DNA of 64,000 bases, taken from IMG/VR virus record IMGVR_UViG_3300033143_001962, positions 62,001-126,000 of that record, one strand, 5' to 3'. Under the pieces are notes generated by a model. The model saw only the letters and a list, made by a program, of their open reading frames with translations, had not been told where the DNA came from and ran no database searches. Positions 15,508 to 53,240 of this stretch are shown here, piece after piece (position 1 is the first letter of the stretch; each line of letters begins with the position of its first letter). The position numbers were made by a program, and so were the translations under genes.

Positions 15508-16536
15508 TTACACAGCCATGTCAGCTTTAATAGCAGGATGATGATTGTAACCTACAAGCTCGAAGTCGTCCATTGTGAAATCAAAAATGCTTTTAACACC
15601 TTTGTTTATATGCAGTTGTGTATCACCGTATGCGTACGGCTTGCGTGTTAACTGTTCTTTAACTTGATCGATGTGATTATTGTAAATGTGTGCATCGCCT
15701 ATAACATGCTTGAACTCACCTACGTCTAAATTGCAAACTTGCGCTATCATATGTGTTAACAATGAATAACTTGCAATATTAAACGGTACGCCTAAAAACA
15801 TATCCGCACTGCGTTGATACATTTGACAACTTAATTTACTAGTAGGAAGCTCTAATTCTTGTAGTACGTGTTCAGTTTTAATTTTACCTTCGTACAATGC
15901 ATCAAGTCTGTTACGACCGCCTTCATCAAATGTACTGCGGTACTTTCTGTATGAATGATTCATATCATCTTGTGTCATTTTACTAACATAGAACTGTGCA
16001 AGTAAGTGACAAGGTGGTAATGCCATGTTATCTATCTCACCTGGGTTCCAAGCTGTAAGTATGTGTCGTCGACTATAAGGATCGTTTTTAATACCATCTA
16101 TTAGATTAGTAATTTGATCAGTGTATGTTATGCGCCCTACTTCAAGTCCATCTTCATTGTGTGATAAAGATTTAAATGAAGGCCAAGTACGCCATTGCAC
16201 TCCGTATACACTTCCTAAGTCACCTTCGAACTTAGCTTTCTTTTTCCAATAATCTGCATCTGCATTTGCAGACCAAATAGTTTTCTTAGGGGTATCTCTA
16301 TCACCGTAGAGTATTTCGGCAAGTCTGCGCTCATCACCACTACCTTCCAAGAACCACAGTAGTTCACTGACTACACTTTTCCAAGCAAGCCTTTTAGTAG
16401 TTACAGCAGGAAAACCATGCGCTAAGTTGTAGTCTGAGTTCATACCGAATACACTTAACGTACCAGTGCCAGTTCTATCACCACGCTCTTCGCCAGAGTC
16501 TAATACATGCTGTAAGTTAAATTTATATGCGTCCAT
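15508..16536 (-). CDS. thyA: Thymidylate synthase
   Basis: DRTGTGT, FPAVTTKR, GSVYGVQWR, AWNP..MALPPCH, YQRSADMFLGVPFNIASY, GDAHIY; about 50-aa in-frame insertion after QFYV. Confidence 0.98.
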   Translation of the reverse strand: MDAYKFNLQHVLDSGEERGDRTGTGTLSVFGMNSDYNLAHGFPAVTTKRLAWKSVVSELLWFLEGSGDERRLAEILYGDRDTPKKTIWSANADADYWKKKAKFEGDLGSVYGVQWRTWPSFKSLSHNEDGLEVGRITYTDQITNLIDGIKNDPYSRRHILTAWNPGEIDNMALPPCHLLAQFYVSKMTQDDMNHSYRKYRSTFDEGGRNRLDALYEGKIKTEHVLQELELPTSKLSCQMYQRSADMFLGVPFNIASYSLLTHMIAQVCNLDVGEFKHVIGDAHIYNNHIDQVKEQLTRKPYAYGDTQLHINKGVKSIFDFTMDDFELVGYNHHPAIKADMAV

Positions 16537-30564: not shown

Positions 30565-30641
30565 TGGTGCCGATTGTCGGATTCGAACTGACCACCTACG
30601 CATTACAAGTGCGTTGCTCTGCCAAAATGAGCTAAACCGGC
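30565..30641 (-). tRNA. trnT: tRNA-Thr(UGU) with encoded CCA
   Basis: GCCGGTT-TA-GCTC-ATTTTGGCA-GAGC-A-ACGCA-CTTGTAA-TGCGT-AGGTG-GTCAG-TTCGAAT-CCGAC-AATCGGC-ACCA; 77 nt; one A-C mismatch in the T stem. Confidence 0.95.
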
Positions 30642-35000: not shown

Positions 35001-35870
35001 TTAAAAGTTACCGTAGTCAACTTGAAATACAGTTAAGCCTAAGTGGCGCCACATGTGAACAACTTGATCACGATCATCAAACACACCAAGCACGTTGTAC
35101 TTGCCCTTGATGTGGTTGTTGTAGATCTCTTCCTTGATTAACGTATCCTTGCGGTTGTCACCTGCCGGTCGAATGAAGAAGTTATCAAAACGAACGTCAT
35201 TGTCTCTGAGCCAAACCCGGGACATTTCTTTGCATACGCCGTCTCGTCCACTAAGCATAATAAGAGTGGTGCTATTCGCCACAGAATTAACCACGTCGAT
35301 TACCGCTTGATTAGGTTCGTCAGTATCAACCTTCATCCATTCAAATGGTCCACGTCCGTCCATTTGTGCAACGGTACCATCAATGTCACATAAGTAACAA
35401 TCTGGCAAGTCTGGATCGTACACTGGCTTTTCAGGGAACCAAATACCGCGCCCACTTTCAAACATACGTGTAATAACACGTTGCCCTACAGGGAACTCAC
35501 GACGTGCATCACGATCTAAACATTCACCGTAGTGAATATCTGTGAACAATTCTTCACGGTAAGTTGCATTGTACTCGTTAGCAATACCTTCCCAGTTCTT
35601 GTTACGACCTGGGTTTAAGTTAGTGTCAGAGATAATAATAGACTTGCCTTGTGACAATGCTTCTTGAGCCATCATAATAGCGGTATAAGAAACTACCTTT
35701 TCACGCCACTTGCTGAACTTGTTGTAACGCTTTCGCCCTTGCATCATTAACCGAATATCGTCACGGTTGATGTTAATGTAGTTTGGGTCAACGATGATCT
35801 TTTGGTTAGCCCAAGTAGTCTTGCCACTTGCTGGCAATCCAACTGTTAGTACTACTTCTTGCTTGGTCAT
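35001..35870 (-). CDS. pseT: Polynucleotide 5'-kinase / 3'-phosphatase
   Basis: GLPASGKTT, NRDDIR, SDTNL; HAD DIDGT, FDDR. Confidence 0.92.
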   Translation of the reverse strand: MTKQEVVLTVGLPASGKTTWANQKIIVDPNYININRDDIRLMMQGRKRYNKFSKWREKVVSYTAIMMAQEALSQGKSIIISDTNLNPGRNKNWEGIANEYNATYREELFTDIHYGECLDRDARREFPVGQRVITRMFESGRGIWFPEKPVYDPDLPDCYLCDIDGTVAQMDGRGPFEWMKVDTDEPNQAVIDVVNSVANSTTLIMLSGRDGVCKEMSRVWLRDNDVRFDNFFIRPAGDNRKDTLIKEEIYNNHIKGKYNVLGVFDDRDQVVHMWRHLGLTVFQVDYGNF

Positions 35871-37067: not shown

Positions 37068-37844
37068 TTAAATCTCTAGGATTAAACGTGGGTCGTAATC
37101 AGTGCTTTCAAACACTTCTGTGCCATCGTAGCTCTTACTAGCATATCCGTGTTGGTTACTTAGCACCATTGTACCATTTAGATCTACGCTAGTTGTATGG
37201 TGTGTATGTCCAAATAACCAGTATTTTGCTTTGGCGTCTAGTATTTTCTCTTCCAAGCCAGTATTGTGGAAACCGTACGTTGTATAGCTTAGTGGAAAGA
37301 ATGGATGTGGAATCATAATAGGACAATGATGTGTAATGATAACATCAGCATCGTAGTTGATCTTTTCACGTGTTCTGTTGTTAATTGCTATTGTGTTATC
37401 AACGTGCCATTTACGCGGAGCAAAGTTCGCATCATCTGTAATACATTCAAAGTCATAAAAACCTTTGTTGACAGCTTGTTTAGAGAACCAATCACCATCA
37501 TGTAAGTCAGTCCATAGTGTGCTACCCCAAAAGGTAACACCATCTAGTTCTAAGTTATCAGTGCCGAGTGCTTCATCCATTAAAATAATGTCATGGCGCT
37601 CTGCAAAATCGTGTGCGATTTGTAATGCTTGGAGGTACTTGCTATGATAGAACTCGTGGTTCCCTAGTACCCAAATAATCTTGTCAGTTGTTTCTTTAAC
37701 CTTATTGAAATAAGTTTCTAAATCTAGTAAGTTGCATATCAGCCCAATGTCACCAGCACAGACTACAACGTCAGAAGAAACCGCAGGTTCCACTAGTGGC
37801 CCACGGTTCTCAATGTGTGTATCTGATTGTAAATGTATTTTCAA
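37068..37844 (-). CDS. Calcineurin-like metallophosphoesterase
   Basis: SDTH, AGD, GNHE, ITHH, GHTH; TTG start. Confidence 0.9.
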   Translation of the reverse strand: MKIHLQSDTHIENRGPLVEPAVSSDVVVCAGDIGLICNLLDLETYFNKVKETTDKIIWVLGNHEFYHSKYLQALQIAHDFAERHDIILMDEALGTDNLELDGVTFWGSTLWTDLHDGDWFSKQAVNKGFYDFECITDDANFAPRKWHVDNTIAINNRTREKINYDADVIITHHCPIMIPHPFFPLSYTTYGFHNTGLEEKILDAKAKYWLFGHTHHTTSVDLNGTMVLSNQHGYASKSYDGTEVFESTDYDPRLILEI

Positions 37845-37917
37845 TATATTAAACTGTATATGTAAATTGTAATACTAATTGTAATTATAACGAATGCAAA
37901 AAGCTTAACTACTGTTC

Positions 37918-38703
37918 TCATTGAACAAAGTCCTTAGCAGTGTACATTCTTTCATCCGCTAAGTGAATTAACTTATCAATTGAACTAGACTCTGTGCTGA
38001 TAGCAACACCGGCACTACATGAAATATTTAAAATATTATTCTCGTAATGTAGTGGCTCGCGCACCCGCATCGTTAACTTGTCACGTACTGTTTCTACATT
38101 TTCTGTGTTGTTAGGAAGTACAACAATAAACTCATCGCCACCATAACGACAAAATAAATCACCATCTCTTAAGACATTTGCGATACGCTTGGCAATAGTT
38201 TTAAGTACGAAGTCACCAGTGCTGTGACCGTGTGTGTCGTTGATTGCTTTAAACTTATTAAGGTCTATAAACATCAATGAAAATTCATCTGTGATTTTAT
38301 TCATTGCGCTAAAGAACTGATCGCGTGTTAGTGCATCAGTTAATGTATCAGTTAATGCATAAGCACCTGGGTCATGAAATACTGCATACGATAAACTGTC
38401 ATTGAGTTTATGACATTGTAACCGTAGCTTCACTCGCGCCCCTTCTTCTGAAATACCGATAGCGGGCGCATGGCTAGTGTTGCAAGTGTCACACTCGTTA
38501 CATGCAAACTTACCAACTGATCCAGTATTACAAAATAAGTAATCGTTTAGACTAGACCCGATTGCACGTACATTATCGACACCAAGCAAGTTAGCACCGT
38601 ATTCATTGATGTCTACAATATTTTGGTCAATATCAAAAACAACAATACCTAGCGGGCATGTGTTTACAATTTGCTTAATGGCATCAATGTCAAGTTGCTG
38701 CAT
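37918..38703 (-). CDS. PAS-GGDEF diguanylate cyclase
   Basis: D-x-LT, FIDLNKFKAINDTHGH..GD..L, intact RYGGDEF and RxxD I-site (RDGD, 5 residues upstream); N-terminal PAS-like region (GIVVFD..NIVDIN). Start moved to ATG 38703. Confidence 0.92.
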   Translation of the reverse strand: MQQLDIDAIKQIVNTCPLGIVVFDIDQNIVDINEYGANLLGVDNVRAIGSSLNDYLFCNTGSVGKFACNECDTCNTSHAPAIGISEEGARVKLRLQCHKLNDSLSYAVFHDPGAYALTDTLTDALTRDQFFSAMNKITDEFSLMFIDLNKFKAINDTHGHSTGDFVLKTIAKRIANVLRDGDLFCRYGGDEFIVVLPNNTENVETVRDKLTMRVREPLHYENNILNISCSAGVAISTESSSIDKLIHLADERMYTAKDFVQ

Positions 38704-38935
38704 TATCGTTTTCTCTGTTAATGAAGAACATTTTGTACGAGACGATGTTGTCTCCGCGCGTTGCGTAGCCTGTGTGTTTGTCAAGTTTTTTCCATTTTAT
38801 TTTTGTTGTTTCGGGAAAGGTTTCAAGGTAGTGTTCACATGCGGTGATAGCTGATTGCTTGCTAGACACAACCGCAAGTGGTTCTGGATGAACCTCTTGG
38901 TCTTCGTGTCCTGACATTATCACATACGCTCTCAT
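38690..38935 (-). CDS. Hypothetical protein coupled to the DGC
   Basis: 81 aa; its stop overlaps the DGC start. Confidence 0.65.
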   Translation of the reverse strand: MRAYVIMSGHEDQEVHPEPLAVVSSKQSAITACEHYLETFPETTKIKWKKLDKHTGYATRGDNIVSYKMFFINRENDNAAT

Positions 38936-38964
38936 TGTATCACCTGTTTATTAACTGTTAACTA

Positions 38965-39024
38965 AGTATAGCAGACCCGTAACAAAAGGTCAACCTTTTA
39001 ATCACTGTATAAATCAATGACTTA
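38965..39024 (-). promoter_or_regulatory. Sigma70-type promoter with IHF-consensus site (opposite orientation)
   Basis: TTGACC-17-TATACT (38993 to 38965); AATCAATGACTTA at 39012-39024. Confidence 0.8.
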
Positions 39025-39921
39025 AAAGGTGTATTTTAGCTTTACGCCGTATAATTCCCATTTATATGGGTAAATCCCACCTATATCGAGTAAATCGTAC
39101 AAGAATTGTACTTGTAAGTCCTTATTAATGTTGTTACGCACTAGGACCTTAAAGGTCACTTCCGGAGATTTGTCTGCTGAATTGATTTGTTGTGTGCCAA
39201 CCATAAGTTTACTATCAACGTACCACTTGTTGCTGTACTTCTTTCTATATCCTACACCAATTAGCTCATCTTGCAGGTGCTCGGGTGAGAAGTACTCCTT
39301 AGGATTAAAGCTTGCGTCTTTAATTTTAAGTAATGCTTGAGCACTTAGCCCGTACTTGATAGGAACAATAACTTTTAATTTAGTTATGTCTTTAACATTA
39401 CCATCACTGAAGTTTTGTGTAGTGTACGCACCAACTAGCGTTGTATCTAGGAATGATGTATTGTAATCCCCTGCAACTCCAATTGACGTAAACGTAATCT
39501 TAGAGTTAATTGCATTAACACTGTCTACAATATTCTTCTCAGCACTTGCAGATACATTGCCTTTGCCTAACTTGCTTGATACATTAATAGTGCCACCAAA
39601 TGTAGACCAGTTACTGCCGAAGTAGTTATGAACCGTACCGTTAACTTGTACACCCTTGCTTAAACGTTTGAATGTACCTTGAACTTTGTTAAGTGACACT
39701 GACTTCAATGTATCACTGGCTGTGAACACACCACTGTTAATACCGTAGATGTAATGTCCTGCTTTTCTTGAGTACCCGCCAGTAAACAATCTAGTATCGT
39801 TGCCATCACTGTCAGTTGTTATTTCGTGCTCGAAGTTTACTTCGTCTGCTAGTGCTAAGTCAGTGATAAGAATTAGTAAAAATACTATCGCTGCTAACAC
39901 AAATCCTTGAGCAATTTTCAT
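39022..39921 (-). CDS. Outer-membrane beta-barrel protein (PgaA/YaiO-porin-like role inferred)
   Basis: Signal peptide ending ALA; alternating amphipathic strands; C-terminal YGVKLKYTF with terminal Phe. Confidence 0.7.
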   Translation of the reverse strand: MKIAQGFVLAAIVFLLILITDLALADEVNFEHEITTDSDGNDTRLFTGGYSRKAGHYIYGINSGVFTASDTLKSVSLNKVQGTFKRLSKGVQVNGTVHNYFGSNWSTFGGTINVSSKLGKGNVSASAEKNIVDSVNAINSKITFTSIGVAGDYNTSFLDTTLVGAYTTQNFSDGNVKDITKLKVIVPIKYGLSAQALLKIKDASFNPKEYFSPEHLQDELIGVGYRKKYSNKWYVDSKLMVGTQQINSADKSPEVTFKVLVRNNINKDLQVQFLYDLLDIGGIYPYKWELYGVKLKYTF

Positions 39922-41249
39922 TTAGTTCCCCATGTCTTTTTCGTGTTAAATACTTCACTTAAATATCCTGTAACAGCCGCCGGAGCAACTAGTACTTGGT
40001 ACACAATCATGTACCATATGAACCCAATTGGGTTACGTCTCACTTTTAATCCCATCTTTTCAAAGATGCGTGTTTGATTAATATAGAATATCCAGTTACT
40101 TAAAAATACAATAGGTAACATCATTAAAATGTAAACGCCTACAATAGTATCGTACCCAAACAACAACGATGCTAATGCACCAGGTATAAAGATAAACAAA
40201 TAAAATGTATCAACAAACGGGATGAACATGTTAATCCAAACAAATGGAGTATTCATCTTAATATCTGTAATAGTCCTAGGATGTATTTTAAATGCTTCTA
40301 TAAGTCCACGTGACCAACGCTTGCGCTGATGGAAGAATGTTTTATAATCTTCTGGAACATTTGTAAATGCTATTGCAGTTTCGTCGTACCCTATTCTATA
40401 TCCCTTTGCACGTAGAGCCCAAGTCAAGACAATATCTTCACCTACAGTGTTTGGCCATCCGCCTACTTCATTTAATGCCGAAGTGCGGTATATTGAAAAT
40501 GCGCCTTGGGCAACTAACGTACCTTGGAATAAACTTTGTACACGCTTCACGACAGAAATGCCATGGAAGTAATCCCACTCTTGTATCTTTGTAAGCCAGT
40601 TGTGTCTACTGTTACGTACAAGTGGTGTACCTGCTACTGCCGCAGTGTTCTCCGGACCAAGTACAATGTTACATACGATATTGTTGATAGCATCTTTGTA
40701 CAAGTAAGTATCTGCGTCTATTGTAATAACGTATTCGTCATCAGTTAACGCAAGTCCGCGGAGTAATGCGTGAGCCTTGCCTACATTTTCTTCTAGCATT
40801 AACGTGTGTATTGCTAAGTTATCGCGTGTGTGCTGAGTTGCTGCTATCTGCGCGTTCTCTACGGTAGCATCCTTTGATCCATCATCAATTACAATTACAT
40901 TTAGTTTCCCGCCGTACTCTTGTTTAGCAACAGACTCAATAGTAGCTTCTATACTTTCTTCTTCATTGTATGCGGCAATTAGAATAGTTATGTCAGGATA
41001 TTCCTCAAGCTCGCCTTTAGTGTATTCTGGCCGCTTGTCCATTAACAGCCCTGTCATTATAAAGACGTTTGCAAAGCCTGGAACAAATGCTAAGAAAAAT
41101 ACTACAACCCAAGCTGCATAAGGAACCCAAAATGCAAATAGTACTTTAAGTTCTTCTACCCAAGGTAGTAGAATCATCCAGCTAATTACTAGCCAGAACG
41201 ATCCCATAAGTGTGCAAATTGCGAGTTTCCCTTTTACTGGTATGTACAT
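39918..41249 (-). CDS. Processive family-2 glycosyltransferase (PgaC/IcaA-like glycan synthase)
   Basis: IAAYNEE, IDDGS, GKA, IDADT, GEDI, QRKRW (D,D,D,QxxRW); TM helices at both ends. Confidence 0.92.
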   Translation of the reverse strand: MYIPVKGKLAICTLMGSFWLVISWMILLPWVEELKVLFAFWVPYAAWVVVFFLAFVPGFANVFIMTGLLMDKRPEYTKGELEEYPDITILIAAYNEEESIEATIESVAKQEYGGKLNVIVIDDGSKDATVENAQIAATQHTRDNLAIHTLMLEENVGKAHALLRGLALTDDEYVITIDADTYLYKDAINNIVCNIVLGPENTAAVAGTPLVRNSRHNWLTKIQEWDYFHGISVVKRVQSLFQGTLVAQGAFSIYRTSALNEVGGWPNTVGEDIVLTWALRAKGYRIGYDETAIAFTNVPEDYKTFFHQRKRWSRGLIEAFKIHPRTITDIKMNTPFVWINMFIPFVDTFYLFIFIPGALASLLFGYDTIVGVYILMMLPIVFLSNWIFYINQTRIFEKMGLKVRRNPIGFIWYMIVYQVLVAPAAVTGYLSEVFNTKKTWGTK

Positions 41250-41260
41250 TTAAAATCCGT

Positions 41261-41791
41261 TTAATCTTTGTGGTCATCAGGTACGTTAAGCCTGTCGTAT
41301 GTAGTGAACTTACCAGACTTGATGTCTTGGTAGTTGATGGGCTTACCACCTGTTAGCTCAACACAAACGTTAACATACCTTTCATCCTTAACACCAGTTG
41401 AGTGGGTATGTCCGTGTATAACTGGCCTGCCCCACAGTTCGCTTTCGTGAATTGGAAAGTGGCTAAGCCAATGCTTTTTGTATTTAACCGGTCCGATGAT
41501 ATCGTCAAATATTTCTAAGTACTCACTTGCAGAGCGTTGATCGTGATTGCCCATTAGCAGTATTTTAGTACCTGGTAATCCCTTAATGTGTGTTAGATCA
41601 AATCCAACGTCACCTAAGATGTAAATCTTGTCACGCTTGTTAACTGTGTCATTCCACAGATCGTAAATCATTTCATCGTGTTCTTCAATTGTTTTAATTC
41701 CGCCCATCGCTTTCGATCGTGCGTAATCATGGAACTCTAGTACCCTAGCGTGTCCTAAGTGTAAGTCACTGTTAAAATATACTTGACTCAT
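41261..41791 (-). CDS. Calcineurin-like metallophosphoesterase
   Basis: SDLHLGH, LGDV, GNHD, SHFP, HGHTH. Confidence 0.88.
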   Translation of the reverse strand: MSQVYFNSDLHLGHARVLEFHDYARSKAMGGIKTIEEHDEMIYDLWNDTVNKRDKIYILGDVGFDLTHIKGLPGTKILLMGNHDQRSASEYLEIFDDIIGPVKYKKHWLSHFPIHESELWGRPVIHGHTHSTGVKDERYVNVCVELTGGKPINYQDIKSGKFTTYDRLNVPDDHKD

Positions 41792-42008
41792 TTTTCTTCC
41801 TTTCCTCTATTTGTTTTGTAATTGAAGCCTCTGTTTGCTTCAATGCTTGGCCTCTTGCCCTGACTCTTGCTAAAACATCAGCAACGGTCTCTTCTTCTTG
41901 TATGCTACCGTCATCTAATAATTTGTACATAGTGAGGTACTGTTCCCATAAGTCTTGTAACCCAGGATGCGCCTCACGCATTAATTCATCTTTGCATTTC
42001 ATAGACAT
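41772..42008 (-). CDS. 'LR..HP.LKDAWE.Y..L.L' family, member 8
   Basis: LMREAHPGLQDLWEQYLTMYKLL. Confidence 0.75.
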   Translation of the reverse strand: MSMKCKDELMREAHPGLQDLWEQYLTMYKLLDDGSIQEEETVADVLARVRARGQALKQTEASITKQIEERKKNESSIF

Positions 42009-42289
42009 TATTCCGGATATCTTCTACTAAATGCACTTTTCATATCTGCTAATGTCTTTCGCTTTCTCGCCATAACATCCGCCAATGAATCTTTCTTAGG
42101 GTCGGGATTATCTACTAGGCACAATTTTAAAATAATGTTGTACTGTTCCCATGCATCTTTTAACGCAGGGTTAGTCTCACGCATCTTTTCTTCGTGCGAC
42201 TTACTTGGATAACTGTTTTTGACATCCTGCCGCAAAGTCATCTCTCTATAGAGATCTTTAATGTTTTCGTATAAATCATCGTCATTCAT
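42008..42289 (-). CDS. 'LR..HP.LKDAWE.Y..L.L' family, member 7
   Basis: KMRETNPALKDAWEQYNIILKL. Confidence 0.75.
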   Translation of the reverse strand: MNDDDLYENIKDLYREMTLRQDVKNSYPSKSHEEKMRETNPALKDAWEQYNIILKLCLVDNPDPKKDSLADVMARKRKTLADMKSAFSRRYPE

Positions 42290-42428
42290 TATTTTGTACC
42301 TCTTTAACTTTTACAACATACCCGCCATGATCCTCTGCCCATCGCTCAGCTCCGTACAAACTGTTAAATGCTTCTTTAACATCGCCAGTTTCATCTACAA
42401 CTAGATGCCATACCCAATTCTGGTTCAT
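42282..42428 (-). CDS. Small hypothetical protein interrupting the array
   Basis: MNQNWVWHLVVDE...; start moved to ATG 42428 (ATGA overlap). Confidence 0.6.
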   Translation of the reverse strand: MNQNWVWHLVVDETGDVKEAFNSLYGAERWAEDHGGYVVKVKEVQNNE

Positions 42429-42574
42429 GTGTGTTCTACCATCTTTAAAATAATTTGATACTTTTCCCAAGCATCTTTAAGCGCAGGATGTTCCTCACGT
42501 AACTTTTCCTCGTTAACTTCGATCCCGTTGAACGGCCCATCGTTGAGTAAATCAGCAAAATCTGTTAAGCTCAT
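42425..42574 (-). CDS. 'LR..HP.LKDAWE.Y..L.L' family, member 6 (49 aa, not in ORF track)
   Basis: MSLTDFADLLNDGPFNGIEVNEEKLREEHPALKDAWEKYQIILKMVEHT. Confidence 0.8.
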   Translation of the reverse strand: MSLTDFADLLNDGPFNGIEVNEEKLREEHPALKDAWEKYQIILKMVEHT

Positions 42575-42948
42575 CACGATGCTAACCTCGCTAATAATTT
42601 ATATTGTTCGTAAGCTTGCTTAAGCTCTTCGTCGTCCTTTATTAAGTTCTGTACTTTTTCATTAACACTGTACAAGTGCTTTGCTTCTTTACGCCACCGC
42701 CAATCATGCATTGCTAAGTAATTACCTGGGATAATAACCGGCGCCCGCATTTTTAAATGTTGCGGTAACAAGGCTTGATACGTATTGTACGTATCCTTAA
42801 TCCCTTTATTGTTAACTACTGCAATCATAGCTTTTCTGTGTGCTAGTACGATAGATTGTGCTTCAGCATCCAGTTTTCTACGTATTTCAATACGTTCTGC
42901 TTCCGTAGCTATTCTTACCCCTGTACTTGTCATTGGCTCTGCACTCAT
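42574..42948 (-). CDS. 'LR..HP.LKDAWE.Y..L.L' family, member 5
   Basis: Ends LIKDDEELKQAYEQYKLLARLAS. Confidence 0.7.
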   Translation of the reverse strand: MSAEPMTSTGVRIATEAERIEIRRKLDAEAQSIVLAHRKAMIAVVNNKGIKDTYNTYQALLPQHLKMRAPVIIPGNYLAMHDWRWRKEAKHLYSVNEKVQNLIKDDEELKQAYEQYKLLARLAS

Positions 42949-43178
42949 TTTCTATTCAACTTCAAAACAATTTGATACTTTTCCCAAGCATCTTTTACTG
43001 CTATGTTATTCTTCCTTAAGTCTAATTCTTCTAGTGCATGACCCCTTGGTGGTCGTGGAGGAGGTGGTGGCGGAACTACCCAGCTCGGGCTACGTGACGG
43101 CGGAATATAATTAGGCCCGATACTATCAGTGTACCCGCTACTAAATGCTTGTTTTAACCTGCGCCACATCTCTTTCAT
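42945..43178 (-). CDS. 'LR..HP.LKDAWE.Y..L.L' family, member 4 (Pro-rich linker)
   Basis: LDLRKNNIAVKDAWEKYQIVLKL; start moved to ATG 43178. Confidence 0.75.
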   Translation of the reverse strand: MKEMWRRLKQAFSSGYTDSIGPNYIPPSRSPSWVVPPPPPPRPPRGHALEELDLRKNNIAVKDAWEKYQIVLKLNRK

Positions 43179-43342
43179 TTGCCGTGCAACCTTAATAACA
43201 TTTGATACTTTTCCCAAGCATCTTGTAAGTCTGGATGTTTAGCCCGCGCCTCAGCCTCAGACATACGTTGTTCAATTGGCTGACTGAGCTTACGATTTCG
43301 TAAACGCTCAAGCATTTCTGTCCCTGTTTTCTTTCTAGTCAC
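43175..43342 (-). CDS. 'LR..HP.LKDAWE.Y..L.L' family, member 3 (55 aa, not in ORF track)
   Basis: GTG start; ...EAEARAKHPDLQDAWEKYQMLLRLHGK. Confidence 0.8.
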   Translation of the reverse strand: MTRKKTGTEMLERLRNRKLSQPIEQRMSEAEARAKHPDLQDAWEKYQMLLRLHGK

Positions 43343-43709
43343 TAAACCCTCTGCCCCCTCGTGGTTGCATTATTGTTGGCCTTACTGAGTTGTTAGCTAT
43401 TTTCATTTCTTCAACTTCTGCGTTCTGTGTGCTAACTAACTTCAACATCATTTCGTACTGTAACTTAGCATGTTGATACGCTTCGTATGTTTCATTTAAC
43501 CCTGGATGTTCCGCTCTTAAATTTGCTTCGACTTCACTGTAATCTTTACGTGCTGGCTTCACCCGCGGCATTGGCGGTGGACGCAGGTGGTGCGGAGCAA
43601 TCTTCATCGGGTCATAACCTGATTTTGTAAACAAGCTTTTAAACTCTTCCCAGAACCCTGGGGTATGTATATCTCGTCCGCCTGGCGGATTAGGTGGTAA
43701 TTGTCCCAT
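43335..43709 (-). CDS. 'LR..HP.LKDAWE.Y..L.L' family, member 2 (Pro-rich)
   Basis: NLRAEHPGLNETYEAYQHAKLQYEMMLKL; start moved to ATG 43709. Confidence 0.7.
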   Translation of the reverse strand: MGQLPPNPPGGRDIHTPGFWEEFKSLFTKSGYDPMKIAPHHLRPPPMPRVKPARKDYSEVEANLRAEHPGLNETYEAYQHAKLQYEMMLKLVSTQNAEVEEMKIANNSVRPTIMQPRGGRGFSD

Positions 43710-43903
43710 TATTTTCTCGCTAACCTCAACACTGTTTGGTACTGTTCCCATGCATCTTTAACGGCATCGTGATTCTCACGCAAGTCTAATTCTTCAGCGA
43801 CTTCTTTACCGTCGCGTTCAGGAATGTAGTAATCGGTATTAATTTTCCATTCGTCTGATTTACGGTTATTAAAATAATCCTTAGCGTAATCGCCCCAGTT
43901 CAT
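43709..43903 (-). CDS. 'LR..HP.LKDAWE.Y..L.L' family, member 1
   Basis: LDLRENHDAVKDAWEQYQTVLRL. Confidence 0.75.
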   Translation of the reverse strand: MNWGDYAKDYFNNRKSDEWKINTDYYIPERDGKEVAEELDLRENHDAVKDAWEQYQTVLRLARK

Positions 43904-44111
43904 TAGTCAACCCACTCTACGTCAATCCATCTATGCACTATGTACCTGGCACCACTCTGTGGGTTAGCGTGAACGACCTCACTGTAAATTTGCCTAATAC
44001 TAACACCTTCGCTCCATCTGGTTTCACCCTGTAACGTAAGCGGGATGAACAAGAAAAGCTTATGTTTTATTCTTTTAGCACCTAACTTAGGTTCTGGTTT
44101 AGCTTTCCATC

Positions 44112-44372
44112 TCATACCGGCTTCACACTCTTAATTGAATCAAGTCTAAAACTACGCCAGCCCTTTGCGTTCACATCGTAAACTGAAAGTACTTCTAAGT
44201 TTTCTTTTTTGGGTTTAGTTTCAGCATCTTCTTTTACTACGCGAGGAGGCAATTCACTTTCTTGTAGTGTGCAAGTCATAACACGCTCATCGCCATTCTT
44301 CTTAGTGAATGTGACAACTACTGTGTCGTCTTTTAATACAGCTTGCAAGTATTTTCTATCAAAATCAGTCAT
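44112..44372 (-). CDS. WYL_2/Sm-like SH3-barrel protein
   Basis: VTFTKKNGDERVMTCTL...VYDVNAKGWRSFRLDSI. Confidence 0.75.
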   Translation of the reverse strand: MTDFDRKYLQAVLKDDTVVVTFTKKNGDERVMTCTLQESELPPRVVKEDAETKPKKENLEVLSVYDVNAKGWRSFRLDSIKSVKPV

Positions 44373-48371: not shown

Positions 48372-49808
48372 TCAGATAGCTGCATTTTCTCTTACTTCAT
48401 CAAATGTGTATTCTTTAGTAACTGTACCATTAAAGAATACTGTTTTAAGTTGAACTTCTTGGTCACCGACGTGCTCTAAACGAACAGTTCTGTAATTGCC
48501 GAAGTCGTCTTTAACTAATGTTAACCGTCCTTTCTTAGATACTTTACCAGGATCAGTCTTTGGATCTTTAAACACATCAATCCATTTGTCATCTACGAAC
48601 GCTGCACTTGCCTTCATCGCAAACTTCTGTGTGTCACGATCTAGTTGCTGCAACATGCCACCACCCATACCGTATGCTACGTTATCTGCACTAAACCCAG
48701 CATCTTCGACAGCGGTAATGATTTCTTTAATGCTGTCGTATGTAATGCCATCACCTTGTATTACACGAATGCAATCAGGAAGCACTTTGTATCCAGTGTC
48801 AGTTTCGGTAGTACCGAACTTGTCAGCTAAAATGTTTAAAACATCTACGACTACTGTAGCAGGATCACCACTGTCTGGACGTATAACAATAGTTGCACCA
48901 CTGTCGATAACTTCCTGCTTAAGCTCGCCACCCCAGAAGTTTTCCGCTGCGTTCATCATATCGTAACTATCTGATACTACTGCAACCGTTGCGCCAGGCT
49001 TAGCAAACTGCTTCAACATGTTACGCATAGCATCTATCTCACCTTCGCGTCCGCCCCAACTTGTCATTGTACTGTGTTCACTTGCTGGAATACTAAACCC
49101 AGGCATCTTGTCTTCGAAGTATTCATCACCCATAGTTAACCATTTAGCTAGTGGTTCAGCGTTGTAGTACTCCATAGCAGTTAACGCACCAGTTATGGTA
49201 TCAGTTACCATAAAGTTAACTAAGTGAGCAGCACCGCCGATACCAGCACTCTCCATGCTACTAACGCCTCGCGCTCCGAAGTCAACTAACTTGAACGGTA
49301 ACGTATTCATGTCGCCACCTGTCTTCATCAAACTAGCTGCAAGTAATTTCTTAATAGCACGAGAGTTAGTTGCGACGGTTGTTCCGTACCATACAGCACG
49401 TAACAATGCAGTTTCAACGTAACTTGTTAACCAAAAGAACTCTGGGTCAGTGTTTATAATTGTAAACAATGCATTACCTGTTGGAACAGTTGTTCCTTCT
49501 GCTACTGCTTTGATTTCAAGTGGTAAGAATCCATCACACTTAGTAACAACACGCATCCAGCCATCGTAGTTGAATGGTGTACCGTGCGCTGCCGCAAAGT
49601 CTCTGCCCATCTCAACTTCTAATTCTGTTACTTGTTTTGATAGTACATTCTTTAAGAATATTTGTAAGCCAAACATTGTAGTGTCTGGAAACTTGCCACC
49701 TCTTGATTCACCGTATGATGCGATGTAAGATGTGTTTGGTGGGTATTGTAAAAATTGCCCAAGCTTATAGCTGTCTGTGTTTAGTACTATTGATTTTAAT
49801 ATATTCAT
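48372..49808 (-). CDS. nadV: Nicotinamide phosphoribosyltransferase (NAMPT)
   Basis: LNTDSYK, LVDFGARG, ASEHS, VSDSYD, IRPDSGDP, IQGDG, GMGGG, AMK. Confidence 0.96.
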   Translation of the reverse strand: MNILKSIVLNTDSYKLGQFLQYPPNTSYIASYGESRGGKFPDTTMFGLQIFLKNVLSKQVTELEVEMGRDFAAAHGTPFNYDGWMRVVTKCDGFLPLEIKAVAEGTTVPTGNALFTIINTDPEFFWLTSYVETALLRAVWYGTTVATNSRAIKKLLAASLMKTGGDMNTLPFKLVDFGARGVSSMESAGIGGAAHLVNFMVTDTITGALTAMEYYNAEPLAKWLTMGDEYFEDKMPGFSIPASEHSTMTSWGGREGEIDAMRNMLKQFAKPGATVAVVSDSYDMMNAAENFWGGELKQEVIDSGATIVIRPDSGDPATVVVDVLNILADKFGTTETDTGYKVLPDCIRVIQGDGITYDSIKEIITAVEDAGFSADNVAYGMGGGMLQQLDRDTQKFAMKASAAFVDDKWIDVFKDPKTDPGKVSKKGRLTLVKDDFGNYRTVRLEHVGDQEVQLKTVFFNGTVTKEYTFDEVRENAAI

Positions 49809-50045
49809 AATAAAACTCCTTTATTATATGTGACGTGTTTCCACGTTATGGTCTGTTAAATTGATCTAACATTTCTTGTCTATCTTCTTCGATTGTTTTT
49901 TCGTATTCTACTATCATGCGCTCACCTAAAATAATACTAGGATGAGAATGTTCGCAACACCGTTGCCCGTTAAATCTTTCACCGCGTAACTGAACAATGC
50001 CACAGTTCTTGCACTTTACTTCTGTAACCATTCGTGTTGTTCTAA

Positions 50046-50399
50046 TCATTTTACTACCTTTAATTCAGTGACCGCGCGATTTACTTCTTCTTCTCCACGC
50101 ACCTCTCTGCCATCGTTAAAAATAATATATGCACGATTTGATTCCAGGCCATGCCCGCAACACGCAACTCTCACGTCTGGCAAGTTTGCAATGCATGGAT
50201 CGTGTCCTTCACTTGTCTTAACTCCGTTGCACTTAGGACATTTTCTATCTGCTGCATCTTCCTCGATTGGTTTATCATTGTCTGCATAACGCCACACTGC
50301 AAAATGCTCATTGCCATTTTCAGAAATAGTGTATTCGTCGTCTCGGAGATATATCTCGTGTCCGAACAAATCAGTTATGCTTTTCCAATTCTCTACCAT
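50046..50399 (-). CDS. Cys-rich hypothetical protein
   Basis: CPKC...GHDPCI..LP.V..ACCGHG. Confidence 0.7.
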   Translation of the reverse strand: MVENWKSITDLFGHEIYLRDDEYTISENGNEHFAVWRYADNDKPIEEDAADRKCPKCNGVKTSEGHDPCIANLPDVRVACCGHGLESNRAYIIFNDGREVRGEEEVNRAVTELKVVK

Positions 50400-50405
50400 A
50401 CTATC

Positions 50406-51305
50406 CTACTTAAAGTTTAACATACGTTCAATTGGAGCTCTCGCCATTACAATCTCATCGTATTTTAAATAATCTATTGCAGTACCACCAGTACCGTCAA
50501 TAGCCGCTTGCACTGCTTCTACAGTATTAAGCTTCATATACGGACAAGTCGCGCACATGCAACCTTTGTAACCTGGCACTAATCTAAAATCTAATTCAGG
50601 TCGTAGCTTTCGCATATCGTTAAGTAACCCTTCTTCAGTTGCTACCCAAATAGTACCAACTTTATTCGGAAAGTTCTTAACCCATTCTAACATCTTACTT
50701 GTACTACCAACAAAGGCAGCTTTATCTAAAATGTCAATTGGACTTTCTGGATGAGCAATAACGTACTTACTACCGTCTGTCCATCCTGCCATATCTTTTT
50801 CAAGTGCTTCTAAATTAAACTGATCGTGTACTTCGCATACAGATGTAAACACGTTCATATCGTACCCGAACTCAGCGTTGATGTACGCGCCCATATTAGC
50901 GTCAGGACTGAATATAACATCATTGCCTGCATCAATCTCTGCTTCTATTATAGCATTAACGTTGGCAGAAGTCACTATAACATCTGCCAAAGCTTTCATT
51001 TCGACTGAGCTGTTAATGTACATAACGTGAGTTGCCCCGGGATTAATAATTTTGAAATTACGTAACCCTACGATATCAGTTTGGGTGACTAATGAACACG
51101 TTGCATTAATGTCAGGAATAATAACTTCGGTGTCCGGAAGCATAACCTTAGCAGTTTCTGCCATGAACTTAACACCAGCAAATACTAAACGTTTAGGATT
51201 GACCTTTTGCGCTTCTTGTATTAAGCCTAAGCTATCACCAACGTAGTCAGCCATTTCTTTAACTTCTTCAGGTGCGTAATAGTGTGCTACTGTCATAGTT
51301 TCCAT
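50406..51305 (-). CDS. nadA: Quinolinate synthase A
   Basis: AHYY, GDSL, GV.FMAETAK, three Fe-S Cys (ATCSL, VCEVH, CPYMK), YINSS, AHPE, GSTS. Confidence 0.9.
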   Translation of the reverse strand: METMTVAHYYAPEEVKEMADYVGDSLGLIQEAQKVNPKRLVFAGVKFMAETAKVMLPDTEVIIPDINATCSLVTQTDIVGLRNFKIINPGATHVMYINSSVEMKALADVIVTSANVNAIIEAEIDAGNDVIFSPDANMGAYINAEFGYDMNVFTSVCEVHDQFNLEALEKDMAGWTDGSKYVIAHPESPIDILDKAAFVGSTSKMLEWVKNFPNKVGTIWVATEEGLLNDMRKLRPELDFRLVPGYKGCMCATCPYMKLNTVEAVQAAIDGTGGTAIDYLKYDEIVMARAPIERMLNFK

Positions 51306-51306
51306 A

Positions 51307-51998
51307 TTAAGCCTCCTTAATAGTTTCGAATAAGTTCATTGCTTGTACTTTTTTCATAGCACCTTCAATGTTCTTAATAACACCTTCTAAGTCATGTTTA
51401 ATAACTTGAAGCTGGTCTTTGTCTAAGTTGCGAACATACTGACTAATAGTAGCAGTATCATCGATACTAATGTTATCATCAATCTCTGGCAGACGATTTC
51501 TAAAATTTATATCATGCGCACCGCGGAACCCCATAATCTGCGCTACTTCATTATTTGATACTTCCATAATGTAGCCGTCGTTTGTGCCTGCTATAATTTT
51601 CATAAGTCACCTCCAATGAAAGCGAACTCTTGTTTGTAGTTTGTTTCATCACGCTTGTCAACTTTGTTCTCTGAACTTATCTTGTGCAATGTGCGTATGT
51701 CGTAGTGCGGACGGTAAATTGCTTGTCCTTCCCAGAAGAACTGTTCTCGCGCTTCATGTTCGACAGCCGCAAGCATTGCTTTATAAGCGGTGCTAACAAC
51801 CTCTTCTTCGCACATGTAATAACTCAACATCCACTTGCGGCACTTTTGCAATTCTAATGTCTCGTCATCTGTGAAACTACCTTTAGCCATAAACGTAATT
51901 TGTAAGTAAGGAACGCCTTTGTTTTCTTTAATGTTAAACTTCCAGTCGTTAAATTTAACTGCACTTATTAGTCTTTTAATTGATTCTAATGTTTGCAT
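51307..51998 (-). other. Two hypothetical ORFs (51307..51603, 51600..51998) inside the NAD operon
   Basis: Coupled ORFs between nadM and nadA. Confidence 0.7.
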
Positions 51999-52000
51999 GA

Positions 52001-53083
52001 TTAAGCCCTCCCTAACATGTTCTTAATAATTGAAAAGTGATCTTCGAACATTACACCTTGCATTTTTTCAAACTCTGCAAGTGGAACCCACTTAGCTACG
52101 GCTGCATCATCACTGCCTTTAACTTTTGGCAAATCTTGTGCATCGTCTAGTTTGAAGTAGTAAACGAATGTAAGGGTTCTACCACGTAAAGAACGATTAG
52201 GTTCATCAAAAACTTCCTTAGCTACAATGGAACCACGTAGTACTTTTTCAGCAACCTTTAATTTAGTTTCTTCTCGTAACTCACGTATAACACCGTCCTG
52301 TACCATCTCGTTAGTTTCTAAGAAGCCACCGGGCATAGCCCATAAATCCTTACCTGGCATCTGTCCACGTTGTATTAATAAGACGTGTCCGCTTTGCTCA
52401 ACTACTGCGTCAACAGTAACAAAGTTTACATCGTATGGTGCTACTGCCCAGTCTTTCTTCTTTTGGATTTCATCTTCCCACTCGCATTGCAATTCAAAGA
52501 ACGTTGGAGTTTTGATAAACTTACGTACTTGATTACCGTATGCTTGACCTGGGATAACATTGTCTGTGAATGATGCTTGATTGCTAAACATTAATTGTCT
52601 AATAGCTGTAGAATCAATTTGATCATCTTTAGCAGGGTACGCTTGCATTTCAATGAAGTCGTACTGTTTGAAGTAGTTAAGGTAATAACTACTCTTGTCT
52701 TTATCGTGTCCGATGAACGCAACTTTTACTTCACCGTCACTGCCACGCTTATCGTAGAATTTTTTACTCGCCCATACTTCTTGCTTAACTTCTTCTACCT
52801 TCTCGCCTACTTGCTTAATCCATTCATTATCATTATAAGATATGTCATTGATATCAGCGACGTTAAGATTTAAGATTTGGGCATTGGCCATAATGGCTTC
52901 TTTGCGTTCTTGGTATGTCCATGGGTTTTTTGTAGTGCGTGGTCCGTTTGCTGAACCAATTAGTACTAACACGTTGTCAGCCAAGTAATCTGCTTTCTTA
53001 AGCGTTTCTTGGTGACCTATGTGGAAAGGTTGAAACCGTCCTATATAGACGATCAGATCATATTTCTTTTGTTCTGTATTCAT
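52001..53083 (-). CDS. nadM: Bifunctional NMN adenylyltransferase / Nudix ADP-ribose pyrophosphatase
   Basis: GRFQPFHIGH (HxGH), IGSA, NPW, DSTAIR; Nudix GGF....E.....RELREET. Start moved to ATG 53083 after GGGAG. Confidence 0.95.
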   Translation of the reverse strand: MNTEQKKYDLIVYIGRFQPFHIGHQETLKKADYLADNVLVLIGSANGPRTTKNPWTYQERKEAIMANAQILNLNVADINDISYNDNEWIKQVGEKVEEVKQEVWASKKFYDKRGSDGEVKVAFIGHDKDKSSYYLNYFKQYDFIEMQAYPAKDDQIDSTAIRQLMFSNQASFTDNVIPGQAYGNQVRKFIKTPTFFELQCEWEDEIQKKKDWAVAPYDVNFVTVDAVVEQSGHVLLIQRGQMPGKDLWAMPGGFLETNEMVQDGVIRELREETKLKVAEKVLRGSIVAKEVFDEPNRSLRGRTLTFVYYFKLDDAQDLPKVKGSDDAAVAKWVPLAEFEKMQGVMFEDHFSIIKNMLGRA

Positions 53084-53240
53084 GATAGACTCCCTATTCA
53101 TGTTATAAATTTGTACAGTAGCTAGTTTCTCGCAGCCTTGTAGTGGTTTAGTATCTATAGTATACTAGCAAACCCTATAGGTCTCTCACCTATCGTAACG
53201 CTTTGAGCGCATCCTCTGCCGATCCTTACTGTTTACTTGC
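53081..53240 (-). ncRNA. Candidate structured 5' leader of the NAD operon
   Basis: About 155-nt untranslated leader with nested stems (see findings). Confidence 0.45.

What the first reader, a model, noticed from the sequence alone, without database searches (positions are those of the whole stretch)
41772..43903. Eight-gene array with variable N-termini and a constant 'LR..HP.LKDAWE.Y..L.L' helix
Eight nearly consecutive coupled ORFs (49-124 aa; two missed by the track) share only one ~22-aa helical motif, usually C-terminal, while their N-termini are unrelated and two are Pro-rich. This looks like a set of adaptors: a common docking or oligomerisation helix carrying different payloads to one partner. 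A combinatorial host-takeover or anti-defence library is one reading.
Basis: partly seen in the sequence, partly recalled or inferred. Interest (0 to 1): 0.6.

Follow-up and report, generated by a model that had tools for sequence, protein, structure and literature searches.

The report
Expanded phage small-protein helix family
A giant T4-like phage carries a row of eight small, overlapping genes that share one ~30-residue helix-kink-helix motif; they belong to a real, undescribed, apparently phage-only protein family that has multiplied locally, but its binding partner and function are still unknown.

Summary
On the minus strand of window 41772-43903, eight of nine overlapping small ORFs (50-124 aa) carry one motif, roughly EExLRxx[N/H]P[A/G][L/V][K/Q][D/E]A[W/Y][E/D][Q/K]YQxhLxL. 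HMM E-values are 1e-13 to 1e-18, against 0.3 or worse for any non-family frame. Conservation is at the protein level. The window lies in a 250-kb IMG/VR contig of a T4-type jumbo phage. The same genome holds six more members: a five-gene array directly after a PCNA-like sliding-clamp gene, and one singleton. A profile search of 1.84 billion proteins found 809 clusters, nearly all 38-183 aa with the motif mostly C-terminal. None matches Pfam, PHROGs, NCBIfam, PADLOC or PDB. Among cultured phages only Pseudomonas phage PA5oct and Sinorhizobium phage Phosso have a member, both annotated hypothetical. At the syntenic site a complete relative has one gene and a closer relative at least five, with gains, losses and a swapped order. 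Most members evolve 3-6 times faster than the flanking enzymes but remain under purifying selection. AlphaFold2 gives confident helices and no globular fold. The best reading is a shared protein-docking or assembly helix on diversifying small accessory proteins. The partner is not identified. The clamp hypothesis is unsupported and the "payload adaptor" idea is only partly supported.

The parts
43709..43903 (-). A1, 64 aa, acidic (pI 4.9). C-terminal motif at 43712-43804. Its ATG overlaps the stop of the upstream phrog_11031 gene by 1 nt.
   Evidence: (E 3.4e-17)
43335..43709 (-). A2, 124 aa, Pro-rich N-terminus. Internal motif at about 43431-43541 with a 7-residue insertion after EAYQ; the same insertion type occurs in L009 and L064. 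The real start is the ATG at 43709 that overlaps the A1 stop; the longer 138-aa call (to 43751) is an out-of-frame artefact.
   Evidence: (E 8.5e-13)
43175..43342 (-). A3, 55 aa, basic, GTG start behind a GGAGG-like site. C-terminal motif at 43178-43270. It is the most conserved member: 89-91% identical to its L041 orthologue.
   Evidence: (E 5.6e-17)
42945..43178 (-). A4, 77 aa, with a poly-Pro tract (16% Pro). C-terminal motif at 42948-43040. It starts in an ATGA overlap with A3. The L041 orthologue keeps the N-terminus but lacks the motif.
   Evidence: (E 1e-15)
42574..42948 (-). A5, 124 aa. C-terminal motif at 42577-42666 plus a degenerate internal copy at 42763-42810. Orthologue P0153 (51% identity) keeps both copies.
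   Evidence: (E 1.7e-13, two stretches)
42425..42577 (-). A6, 50 aa (49 aa if it starts at the ATG one codon in). It is essentially the motif (42428-42523) plus 18 N-terminal residues. Absent from the L041 array.
   Evidence: (E 4.8e-18)
42282..42428 (-). A7, 48 aa, with no motif; an unrelated small acidic protein interleaved in the array. Orthologue in L041 is 67% identical.
42008..42289 (-). A8, 93 aa. Internal motif at 42107-42205, then a Pro-rich linker and a basic helix of the type [D/N][I/L/V]Lxx[I/M]RxR. The AF2 model has helices 3-25, 32-39, 41-60 and 69-90.
   Evidence: (E 2.4e-17)
41772..42008 (-). A9, 78 aa. N-terminal motif at 41904-42002 followed by the same basic helix as A8. Together with A8 it matches the single gene found at this site in the complete relative G001.
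   Evidence: (E 4.2e-16)
43903..44372 (-). Two small upstream genes coupled to the array: a WYL_2/Sm-like protein (44112-44372) and a phrog_11031 protein (43903-44115). A sigma70-like promoter match lies at 44425-44397; this is a consensus match only.
41261..41791 (-). Phosphoesterase (phrog_547). Its start overlaps the end of A9 by 20 nt. It is the conserved downstream anchor of the locus in G001 (72% identity) and L041 (87%).

Best explanation
The array is a lineage-specific tandem expansion of an undescribed, apparently phage-only family of small helical proteins. The family is defined by a 27-31-residue module: a short helix ending in an invariant Arg, an (N/H)-P kink, then a 20-residue helix whose core [L/V][K/Q][D/E]A[W/Y][E/D][Q/K]YQ is conserved on every face.

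Shown:
- The genes are real. They show protein-level constraint, have orthologues under purifying selection, and are tightly translationally coupled.
- The family has at least 14 genes in this genome and 809 clusters in metagenomes.
- The locus gains, loses and reorders members between close relatives.
- Most members evolve several times faster than their enzyme neighbours.
- The module is predicted as confident helices without a globular fold.

Inferred: the module is a protein-protein docking or assembly element that plugs each paralogue into the same conserved partner surface. The variable N-termini (coiled coil, poly-Pro, a basic helix) set valency or add second contacts. The phage would then make a coupled, roughly equimolar set of related binders, most likely accessory modulators of a host or phage hub during early or middle infection. 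The partner is unknown.
For: - Motif significance and restriction to small ORFs.
- Protein-level selection: codon-position identity is 0.62/0.76/0.48, and 42% of identical-residue codon pairs are synonymous variants. The DNA repeats are only 61-75% identical.
- Orthologues in L041 have pN far below pS. dN is 0.24-0.39 for A4N, A5, A7, A8 and A9, against 0.07-0.09 for the phosphoesterase, GT2 and A3.
- Expansion at a conserved site: there is one gene between the phosphoesterase and the WYL_2 gene in the complete relative G001, and at least five motif-family orthologues (of A3, A4, A5, A8 and A9; the A4 one has lost the motif) plus the A7 orthologue in L041. In L041 A6 is absent and the A8/A9 order is swapped.
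- Copy number: 14 genes in G000, 9 matches in G001, 0-1 in wider-clade genomes.
- Structure: A8 has pLDDT 90.5 but pTM 0.43, with the motif forming helix 32-39, a kink, then helix 41-60.
- Logo: R 94%, P 94%, W/Y 98%, Y 93%, Q 86%, with nine consecutive conserved positions.
- Every gene junction overlaps.
- Many members have a heptad-like helix directly before the motif.
- No match in any curated library, PDB, or prokaryote genome.
Against: - No partner has been identified, and no fusion of the motif to a domain of known function was found. The only long hit, P0083 with a FecR domain, sits on a 1.9-kb scaffold and is probably chimeric.
- The same conservation pattern could arise from self-assembly rather than docking.
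- Expression is unverified because no run was listed.
- The top-150 logo is biased toward the consensus.
- A host-interaction role rests only on fast evolution and accessory status.
Confidence: 0.5

Rival explanations
1. Self-association module. The helix-kink-helix makes homo- or hetero-oligomeric helical bundles among the paralogues themselves, so the coupled array produces mixed assemblies rather than binders of an external partner.
For: The long helix is amphipathic, with L/A/W/Y/hydrophobic/L at i, i+3/4, i+7 spacing. Heptad-like helices precede the motif in B1-B4, S1, PA5oct EST35_0319 and the Phosso protein. Translational coupling suggests stoichiometric co-production. The monomer model has no tertiary fold (pTM 0.43). 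Some members (A5, B5 and its orthologues) carry two motif copies.
Against: Polar positions (R, N/H, D/E, E/D, Q) are as conserved as the hydrophobic stripe, which is unusual for a plain coiled coil. Wider-clade genomes and PA5oct hold a single copy, so hetero-oligomer networks cannot be the ancestral role.
Confidence: 0.25
2. Clamp-docking peptides. The motif is a PIP-like C-terminal tail that binds the phage's own PCNA-type sliding clamp. The paralogues would then compete for or decorate the clamp, as the C-terminal tails of T4 gp43, gp33 and gp55 do on gp45.
For: The second array starts 3-4 nt after the stop of a 239-aa gene that folds as a PCNA-type clamp (pLDDT 87.8, pTM 0.86; Foldseek PCNA hits at E about 1e-10, TM about 0.7). 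That adjacency recurs in L004, L007, L008, L009, L011, L015 and L049. The motif core reads [K/Q]xx[W/Y]xxYQ and is usually C-terminal. The only cultured phages with the motif are those with the closest clamps: PA5oct at 34% and Phosso at 30% identity.
Against: Only 8 of 67 clamp loci with enough downstream sequence have a motif gene there. Wider-clade genomes with the same clamp have 0-1 copies anywhere, and one 97%-complete genome has none. The array in the window is about 107 kb from the clamp gene. The canonical PIP positions are not met: an aromatic replaces the aliphatic at position 4, and Q replaces the aromatic at position 8. The conserved unit is far longer than a clamp-binding peptide.
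Confidence: 0.1
3. Targeting signal or membrane anchor. The shared helix either routes diverse small proteins into a phage assembly (as the capsid-targeting sequence of the T4 internal proteins does) or acts as an in-plane amphipathic membrane anchor.
For: The module is short, shared and terminal on unrelated proteins. W and Y favour interfaces.
Against: In the PA5oct record, virion proteins detected by mass spectrometry carry an 'ESI-MS/MS' note, and EST35_0319 does not. The helix carries conserved acidic residues next to W/Y and little net positive charge, unlike known bacterial membrane-targeting helices (own knowledge). The T4 capsid-targeting sequence is N-terminal and cleaved (own knowledge).
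Confidence: 0.08
4. Not a protein feature. The repeat is a DNA or RNA element (promoter, recombination site, regulatory hairpin) or a chance set of spurious ORFs.
For: The motif usually sits just upstream of the next start codon. Its last codons (AGG TTx) can supply a Shine-Dalgarno-like GAGG. A 23-nt tract is identical in A3, A4 and A6.
Against: Second codon positions are the most conserved and third positions the least. 83 of 198 identical-residue codon pairs use different codons. Substitutions are conservative (W/Y/F, K/Q, D/E, I/L/V/M). The motif is internal in A2, A8 and A9. There are 809 protein clusters elsewhere, and orthologues have pN far below pS.
Confidence: 0.02

Closest known systems
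Pseudomonas phage PA5oct EST35_0319 (QCG76200.1, 'hypothetical protein') and an unnamed Sinorhizobium phage Phosso ORF
   Same: Both are small proteins (86 aa and about 120 aa) with an upstream coiled-coil-like helix and a C-terminal copy of the same motif (profile E 9e-7 and 2.6e-5 per genome). PA5oct is a T4-core jumbo phage with the closest cultured clamp.
   Different: Each is a single copy rather than an array. The PA5oct gene lies 3.5 kb downstream of the clamp, not adjacent. Neither has a known function, and no per-gene expression data could be retrieved.
C-terminal clamp-binding tails and PIP boxes (T4 gp43, gp33 and gp55 on gp45; Qxx[ILM]xx[FY][FY] on PCNA). Own knowledge.
   Same: These are short, usually C-terminal docking elements shared by otherwise unrelated proteins. 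One array here is coupled to a PCNA-type clamp gene, and the core [K/Q]xx[W/Y]xxY loosely recalls a PIP box.
   Different: The unit here is three to four times longer and strongly helical, with a conserved upstream helix and Arg. PIP positions 4 and 8 are not met. The adjacency is limited to a subclade, and no binding support was obtained.
Capsid-targeting sequence of the T4 internal proteins (IPI-III, Alt). Own knowledge.
   Same: The logic is the same: one short constant peptide on several unrelated small proteins directs them to one destination.
   Different: The T4 signal is about 10 aa, N-terminal and cleaved by the prohead protease. There is no sequence similarity, and the T4 genome has no match to this motif at E<=1.
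Lineage-specific expansions of small proteins in jumbo phages, for example about 35 zinc-ribbon copies in Bacillus phage G (Iyer et al. 2021, PMC7824862)
   Same: A small domain has multiplied many-fold in one jumbo-phage lineage while relatives keep 0-1 copies. The function is inferred only from context.
   Different: The fold is different (all-helical, no metal site), the family is different, and here the copies form overlapping coupled arrays.

Membership tests
New motif family (PA5oct EST35_0319-like small proteins) | Significant match to the 31-position helix-kink-helix profile (LR..[N/H]P.[L/V][K/Q][D/E]A[W/Y][E/D][Q/K]YQ..L.L) | tested here: met
   Eight window ORFs score E 4.8e-18 to 8.5e-13. 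There are 809 clusters at E<=1e-3 among 1.84 billion proteins.
New motif family (PA5oct EST35_0319-like small proteins) | Small protein with the motif at or near the C-terminus and an unrelated N-terminus | tested here: met
   Among the top 150 representatives the median length is 82.5 aa, and 117 of 160 motif copies end within 15 residues of the C-terminus. In the window the motif is C-terminal in five of eight ORFs.
PIP-box / PCNA-interacting peptides | Qxx[I/L/M]xx[F/Y][F/Y] consensus | tested here: not met
   In the logo, position 1 is Q 46% / K 45%, position 4 is W 88% / Y 10% (not aliphatic), position 7 is Y 93%, and position 8 is Q 86% (not aromatic).
PIP-box / PCNA-interacting peptides | Physical binding to the cognate sliding clamp | tested here: inconclusive
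   A single complex prediction was run with the clamp trimer and the motif. The tool's verdict was 'no answer', which is neither support nor evidence against.
J-domain (DnaJ, PF00226) | Invariant HPD tripeptide between helices II and III, and a Pfam DnaJ match | tested here: not met
   There is no Pfam hit. The position before P is N in 56% of copies, and the position after P is A or G in 84%. Only A3 reads HPD.
T4 RpbA / gp45.2 (small genes beside T4 gene 45) | Sequence or profile similarity | tested here: not met
   hhalign probability is 0.2% or less for both. The T4 genome has no motif match at E<=1.
Any curated family (Pfam-A, PHROGs v4, NCBIfam 20, PADLOC-DB 2, PDB sequences) | Score above the curated or significance threshold | tested here: not met
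   The best hits are E 0.0024-0.25 and far below the cut-offs.
T4-type capsid-targeting sequence proteins | N-terminal, about 10 aa, cleaved signal; protein present in virions | tested here: not met
   The motif is C-terminal or internal. PA5oct EST35_0319 lacks the virion mass-spectrometry note that other genes in that record carry. Cleavage was not testable.

The most novel reading that the evidence does not exclude
The motif is a dedicated docking helix for one central hub, either the phage's PCNA-type clamp or a host machine such as RNA polymerase. The coupled arrays would then encode a combinatorial, rapidly evolving set of hub-binders that reprogram replication or transcription. This would be a phage counterpart of a short-linear-motif 'tool-belt', expanded to 14 genes in one genome.
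Probability: 0.12. Interest if true: 0.8.

Novelty: new variant of a known kind. Interest (0 to 1): 0.5.

Why it matters
Small phage proteins are where many host-takeover and counter-defence activities have been found, and most remain unclassified. This work defines a compact, easily recognised module: 809 clusters at 50% identity, no curated family, and no cellular homologue. The module marks a large set of such proteins in an abundant group of uncultured T4-core jumbo phages; more than 580 related clamp loci were found in IMG/VR. The family shows copy-number swings from 0-1 to 14 genes per genome. One member sits in a culturable phage, PA5oct on Pseudomonas aeruginosa, so the partner question can be tested directly. 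If a single partner exists, the family would be a natural library of binders to it. If there is none, it is still a new domain of unknown function worth registering.

Tried and rejected
- **Complex prediction.** Clamp trimer plus the 32-aa motif scored 0.01 against a mark of 0.32, and the tool's verdict was 'no answer'. I do not use it as evidence either way.
- **Family and structure libraries.** Pfam, PHROGs (two rounds), NCBIfam, PADLOC, a PDB sequence profile, Foldseek-PDB on the A8 model and the ESM Atlas gave nothing beyond unnamed viral clusters.
- **Cluster names.** None of ten representatives carries a name.
- **Cultured phages.**
  - megablast of the locus found nothing.
  - tblastn of A8, P0007 and P0066 found nothing beyond a marginal Phosso hit.
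  - The profile search found no match at E<=0.1 in Vibrio phage 2.275.O, at E<=0.01 in Atu_ph07, fEgEco12, XacN1 or SCTP-2, or at E<=1 in T4.
- **Prokaryote genomes.** A pattern scan of one genome per species in genome contigs returned 19 pattern matches, none confirmed as a relative.
- **T4 RpbA and gp45.2.** Both are unrelated.
- **Expression.** No sequencing run was listed. The PA5oct paper holds no per-gene data in the available text or supplements.
- **FecR fusion (P0083).** It sits on a 1.9-kb scaffold and I treat it as probably chimeric.
- **Clamp adjacency as a general rule.** Rejected after sampling 80 clamp loci.
- **J-domain, WXG100-like and FtsZ-tail resemblances.** I considered these by eye and dropped them. 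The defining residues are absent or the spacing differs.
- **Possible frameshift fusions.** The alternative frames that are open across the motif (the 'MGKVSN' starts) were considered and dropped. About 14 stop-free codons is expected by chance roughly half the time.
- **Literature.** Searches found no description of the family.
Full report
**1. What is there**

The window is bases 62001-126000 of a 249,797-bp IMG/VR virus record that CheckV rates 72% complete. From 44115 down to 41261 on the minus strand there is an unbroken chain of overlapping genes. In order these are a phrog_11031 gene, nine small ORFs that I call A1-A9, and a phosphoesterase. Every junction overlaps by 1-20 nt as ATGA, GTGA or TAATG.

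Eight of the nine small ORFs (all except A7) carry one motif. An HMM built from the eight copies and run against all 4,779 six-frame segments of the genome returns them at E 4.8e-18 to 8.5e-13. The best unrelated segment scores E 0.34.

All-against-all BLASTP shows the paralogues align only across 20-35 residues at the motif. The exception is A8/A9, which share a further basic helix. A2 and A4 are Pro-rich.

- The conserved unit is about 27-31 residues, not 22.
- A5 has a second, degenerate internal copy that its orthologue also keeps.
- The similar-looking 'MGKVSN' N-termini in the longest-ORF calls of A4, A7 and A2 are the preceding gene's DAWEKYQ codons read in another frame. The real starts are the ATGs that overlap the preceding stop.

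**2. Protein motif, not a nucleic-acid element**

Within the 21-codon core, mean pairwise identity is 0.62, 0.76 and 0.48 at codon positions 1, 2 and 3. Of 198 codon pairs that encode the same residue, 83 use different codons. The underlying DNA repeats are only 61-75% identical. Substitutions are conservative, and the motif is internal in three genes.

Orthologues in a closer relative (L041) have pN far below pS for every member. No consensus terminator lies inside the array on the coding strand. A sigma70-like match sits upstream of the WYL_2 gene at 44425-44397, but this is a consensus match only.

**3. The phage and the rest of the family in it**

The genome encodes a T4-type major capsid protein (PF07068, E 9e-97). 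Around the array it encodes NAD-salvage enzymes, polynucleotide kinase and thymidylate synthase. No close cultured relative exists.

The motif HMM finds six more genes outside the window. Five form an overlapping array at genome 211753-212869, and its last gene has two motif copies. The sixth is a singleton at 200856-201161. That makes 14 genes and 16 motif copies in 250 kb.

The five-gene array begins 3-4 nt after the stop of a 239-aa gene (phrog_12062, annotated 'unknown function'). AlphaFold2 folds this gene confidently (pLDDT 87.8, pTM 0.86). Foldseek matches it to yeast, human and archaeal PCNA at E about 1e-10 and TM about 0.7. It is the phage's sliding clamp.

**4. The family elsewhere**

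A pattern scan of IMG/VR found 13 further loci, several with arrays of 3-6 motif genes. A profile of 53 motif copies was searched against 1.84 billion representative proteins. It found 809 clusters at E<=1e-3 and 19 at E<=1e-10.

Among the best 150 the median length is 82.5 aa and the range is 38-336 aa. Of 160 motif copies, 117 end within 15 residues of the C-terminus, and ten proteins carry two copies. None of ten representatives carries a name. No curated library or PDB sequence matches. No prokaryote species genome holds a relative by pattern scan.

Among cultured phages the profile hits one 86-aa hypothetical protein of Pseudomonas phage PA5oct (EST35_0319, 3.5 kb downstream of its clamp) and one clear ORF of Sinorhizobium phage Phosso. 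It does not hit Vibrio phage 2.275.O, Atu_ph07, fEgEco12, XacN1, SCTP-2 or T4.

A subfamily that includes A8, A9 and many metagenomic proteins adds a Pro-rich linker and a basic helix of the type [D/N][I/L/V]Lxx[I/M]RxR after the motif. Some members add a third short motif. The proteins look like strings of short motifs and helices rather than domains.

**5. How the locus evolves**

In the complete 344-kb relative G001, the site between the phosphoesterase (72% identity) and the WYL_2 gene holds a single 91-aa member of the A8/A9 type.

In the closer relative L041 the syntenic array reads as follows:
- A3 orthologue, 89% identical.
- A4 N-terminus without the motif.
- A5 orthologue, 51% identical.
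- A7 orthologue, 67% identical.
- An A9-like gene, then an A8-like gene, so the order is swapped relative to the window.
- An inserted 275-aa gene that resembles a homing endonuclease by eye (not scanned).
- A truncated phosphoesterase (87% identical) and GT2 (91% identical).

A6 is absent from L041.

Non-synonymous divergence is 0.24-0.39 for A4N, A5, A7, A8 and A9, against 0.07-0.09 for the flanking enzymes and A3. Whole-record searches give 9 matches in G001, 8 in a 78-kb fragment and 6 in a 70-kb fragment. Wider-clade genomes of 137-338 kb give only 0-1 matches, and one 97%-complete genome gives none. The window's array is therefore a secondary, lineage-specific expansion inside a subclade that had already amplified the family.

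**6. Is the clamp the partner?**

The clamp-to-array adjacency recurs in G000, L004, L007, L008, L009, L011, L015 and L049. The motif core loosely recalls a PIP box. I then fetched 80 clamp loci (56-77% identity; more than 580 exist in IMG/VR) to test how general the adjacency is.

Only 8 of the 67 loci with at least 1.5 kb of downstream sequence have a motif gene there, and none of the 80 has one upstream. In the others the same slot holds unrelated genes, so it behaves as a variable insertion site. PIP positions 4 and 8 are not met. The single complex prediction returned 'no answer', and I do not count it either way. I keep the clamp hypothesis as a minor rival.

**7. Structure and likely mode of action**

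With a 30-sequence alignment, A8 is predicted as four helices at pLDDT 90.5 but pTM 0.43. The helices are confident but there is no defined packing. The motif forms helix 32-39, a kink at N-P, then helix 41-60. Foldseek finds nothing.

The logo from 160 copies shows R 94%, N/H 84%, P 94%, L/V 97%, K/Q 91%, D/E 96%, A/L 98%, W/Y 98%, E/D 94%, Q/K/R 93%, Y 93%, Q 86% and L 93%. Nine consecutive positions are conserved on all faces of the helix, including the polar ones. This is more than a generic coiled coil needs. It is what one expects of a helix enclosed by a specific partner surface or by a specific small bundle.

My best-supported reading, at confidence about 0.5, is a shared docking or assembly module on diversifying small accessory proteins made in coupled, roughly equal amounts. 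Self-association is the main rival (0.25), followed by clamp docking (0.10) and a targeting signal or membrane anchor (0.08). A nucleic-acid element or an artefact is effectively excluded.

**8. Limits**

Expression is unverified. dS between orthologues is saturated, so only pN against pS is meaningful. The logo comes from top-scoring hits and overstates conservation somewhat.

**9. Verdict**

This is a real, undescribed, apparently phage-only small-protein family with a sharply defined helix-kink-helix module, locally expanded to eight genes here. The phenomenon itself, lineage-specific expansion of small accessory proteins in jumbo phages, is known (for example PMC7824862). The family and its architecture are new, and the function is open. 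Interest is 0.5.

Noticed in passing
G000 genome 211753-212869 (-) = L002:2754-3870; G000 200856-201161 (-) = L003:2357-2662 (outside the window): A second, five-gene overlapping array of the same family lies directly after the sliding-clamp gene; its last gene has two motif copies. A singleton of the PA5oct EST35_0319 type lies next to a gene that looks like GTP cyclohydrolase I (folE) by eye; that gene was not scanned.
   Followed up: yes
G000 212876-213592 (-) = L002:3877-4593: phrog_12062 ('unknown function', and annotated 'structural protein' in PA5oct) folds as a PCNA/gp45-type sliding clamp. More than 580 relatives exist in IMG/VR, so this phage clade is abundant. The slot just downstream of the clamp is a variable insertion site that holds motif genes, sulfotransferase-like genes or radical-SAM-like genes, ahead of a conserved ~510-580-aa gene.
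   Followed up: partly
window 708-10966 and 28436-29701 (+), 12269-13777 (+): There are at least five paralogous radical-SAM-domain ORFs plus a Nol-like carbamoyltransferase. This may be a biosynthetic or modification cluster. A family member elsewhere (P0151, L048) is also embedded among radical-SAM/SPASM genes.
   Followed up: no
window 37068-41249 (-): Directly downstream of the array and phosphoesterase lie a membrane GT2 synthase (chitin/cellulose-synthase-like, 443 aa), a 299-aa unknown, a PAS-GGDEF diguanylate cyclase and a Metallophos protein. The same set is found in L041. This looks like a phage-encoded polysaccharide-synthase and c-di-GMP module.
   Followed up: partly
window 48372-53101 (-): An NAD gene set: NAMPT, quinolinate synthase NadA, and a NadR-like cytidylyltransferase fused to Nudix. 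Also present are Pnk (35001-35870), thymidylate synthase (15508-16536) and tRNA-Thr (30565-30641).
   Followed up: no
A8 42011-42106, A9 41775-41903; P0024, P0034, P0041, P0050-52, P0062, P0075, P0099, P0103: A second recurrent short motif, a basic helix [D/N][I/L/V]Lxx[I/M]RxR, follows the main motif after a Pro-rich linker and is sometimes also N-terminal. A third motif, 'GVHIEADM', occurs in P0034, P0052, P0078 and P0104. The family looks like a string of short linear motifs.
   Followed up: partly
window 43710-43751, 43179-43217, 42429-42470 (-): The longest-ORF calls of A2, A4 and A7 begin at ATG/TTG codons inside the previous gene's D-A-W codons. This produces near-identical but spurious 'MG(K/T)V(S/P)N' N-termini, which is a trap for gene callers.
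   Followed up: yes
L041:1611-2992: In the closer relative, a 275-aa gene that resembles a homing endonuclease (by eye; not scanned) sits between the array and the phosphoesterase. The phosphoesterase's called ORF there lacks the first ~28 residues.
   Followed up: no
L047 (P0083, 336 aa): This is the only long hit. A FecR-domain protein runs into a C-terminal motif copy on a 1.9-kb scaffold. It is probably an assembly or gene-call chimera rather than a real fusion.
   Followed up: partly
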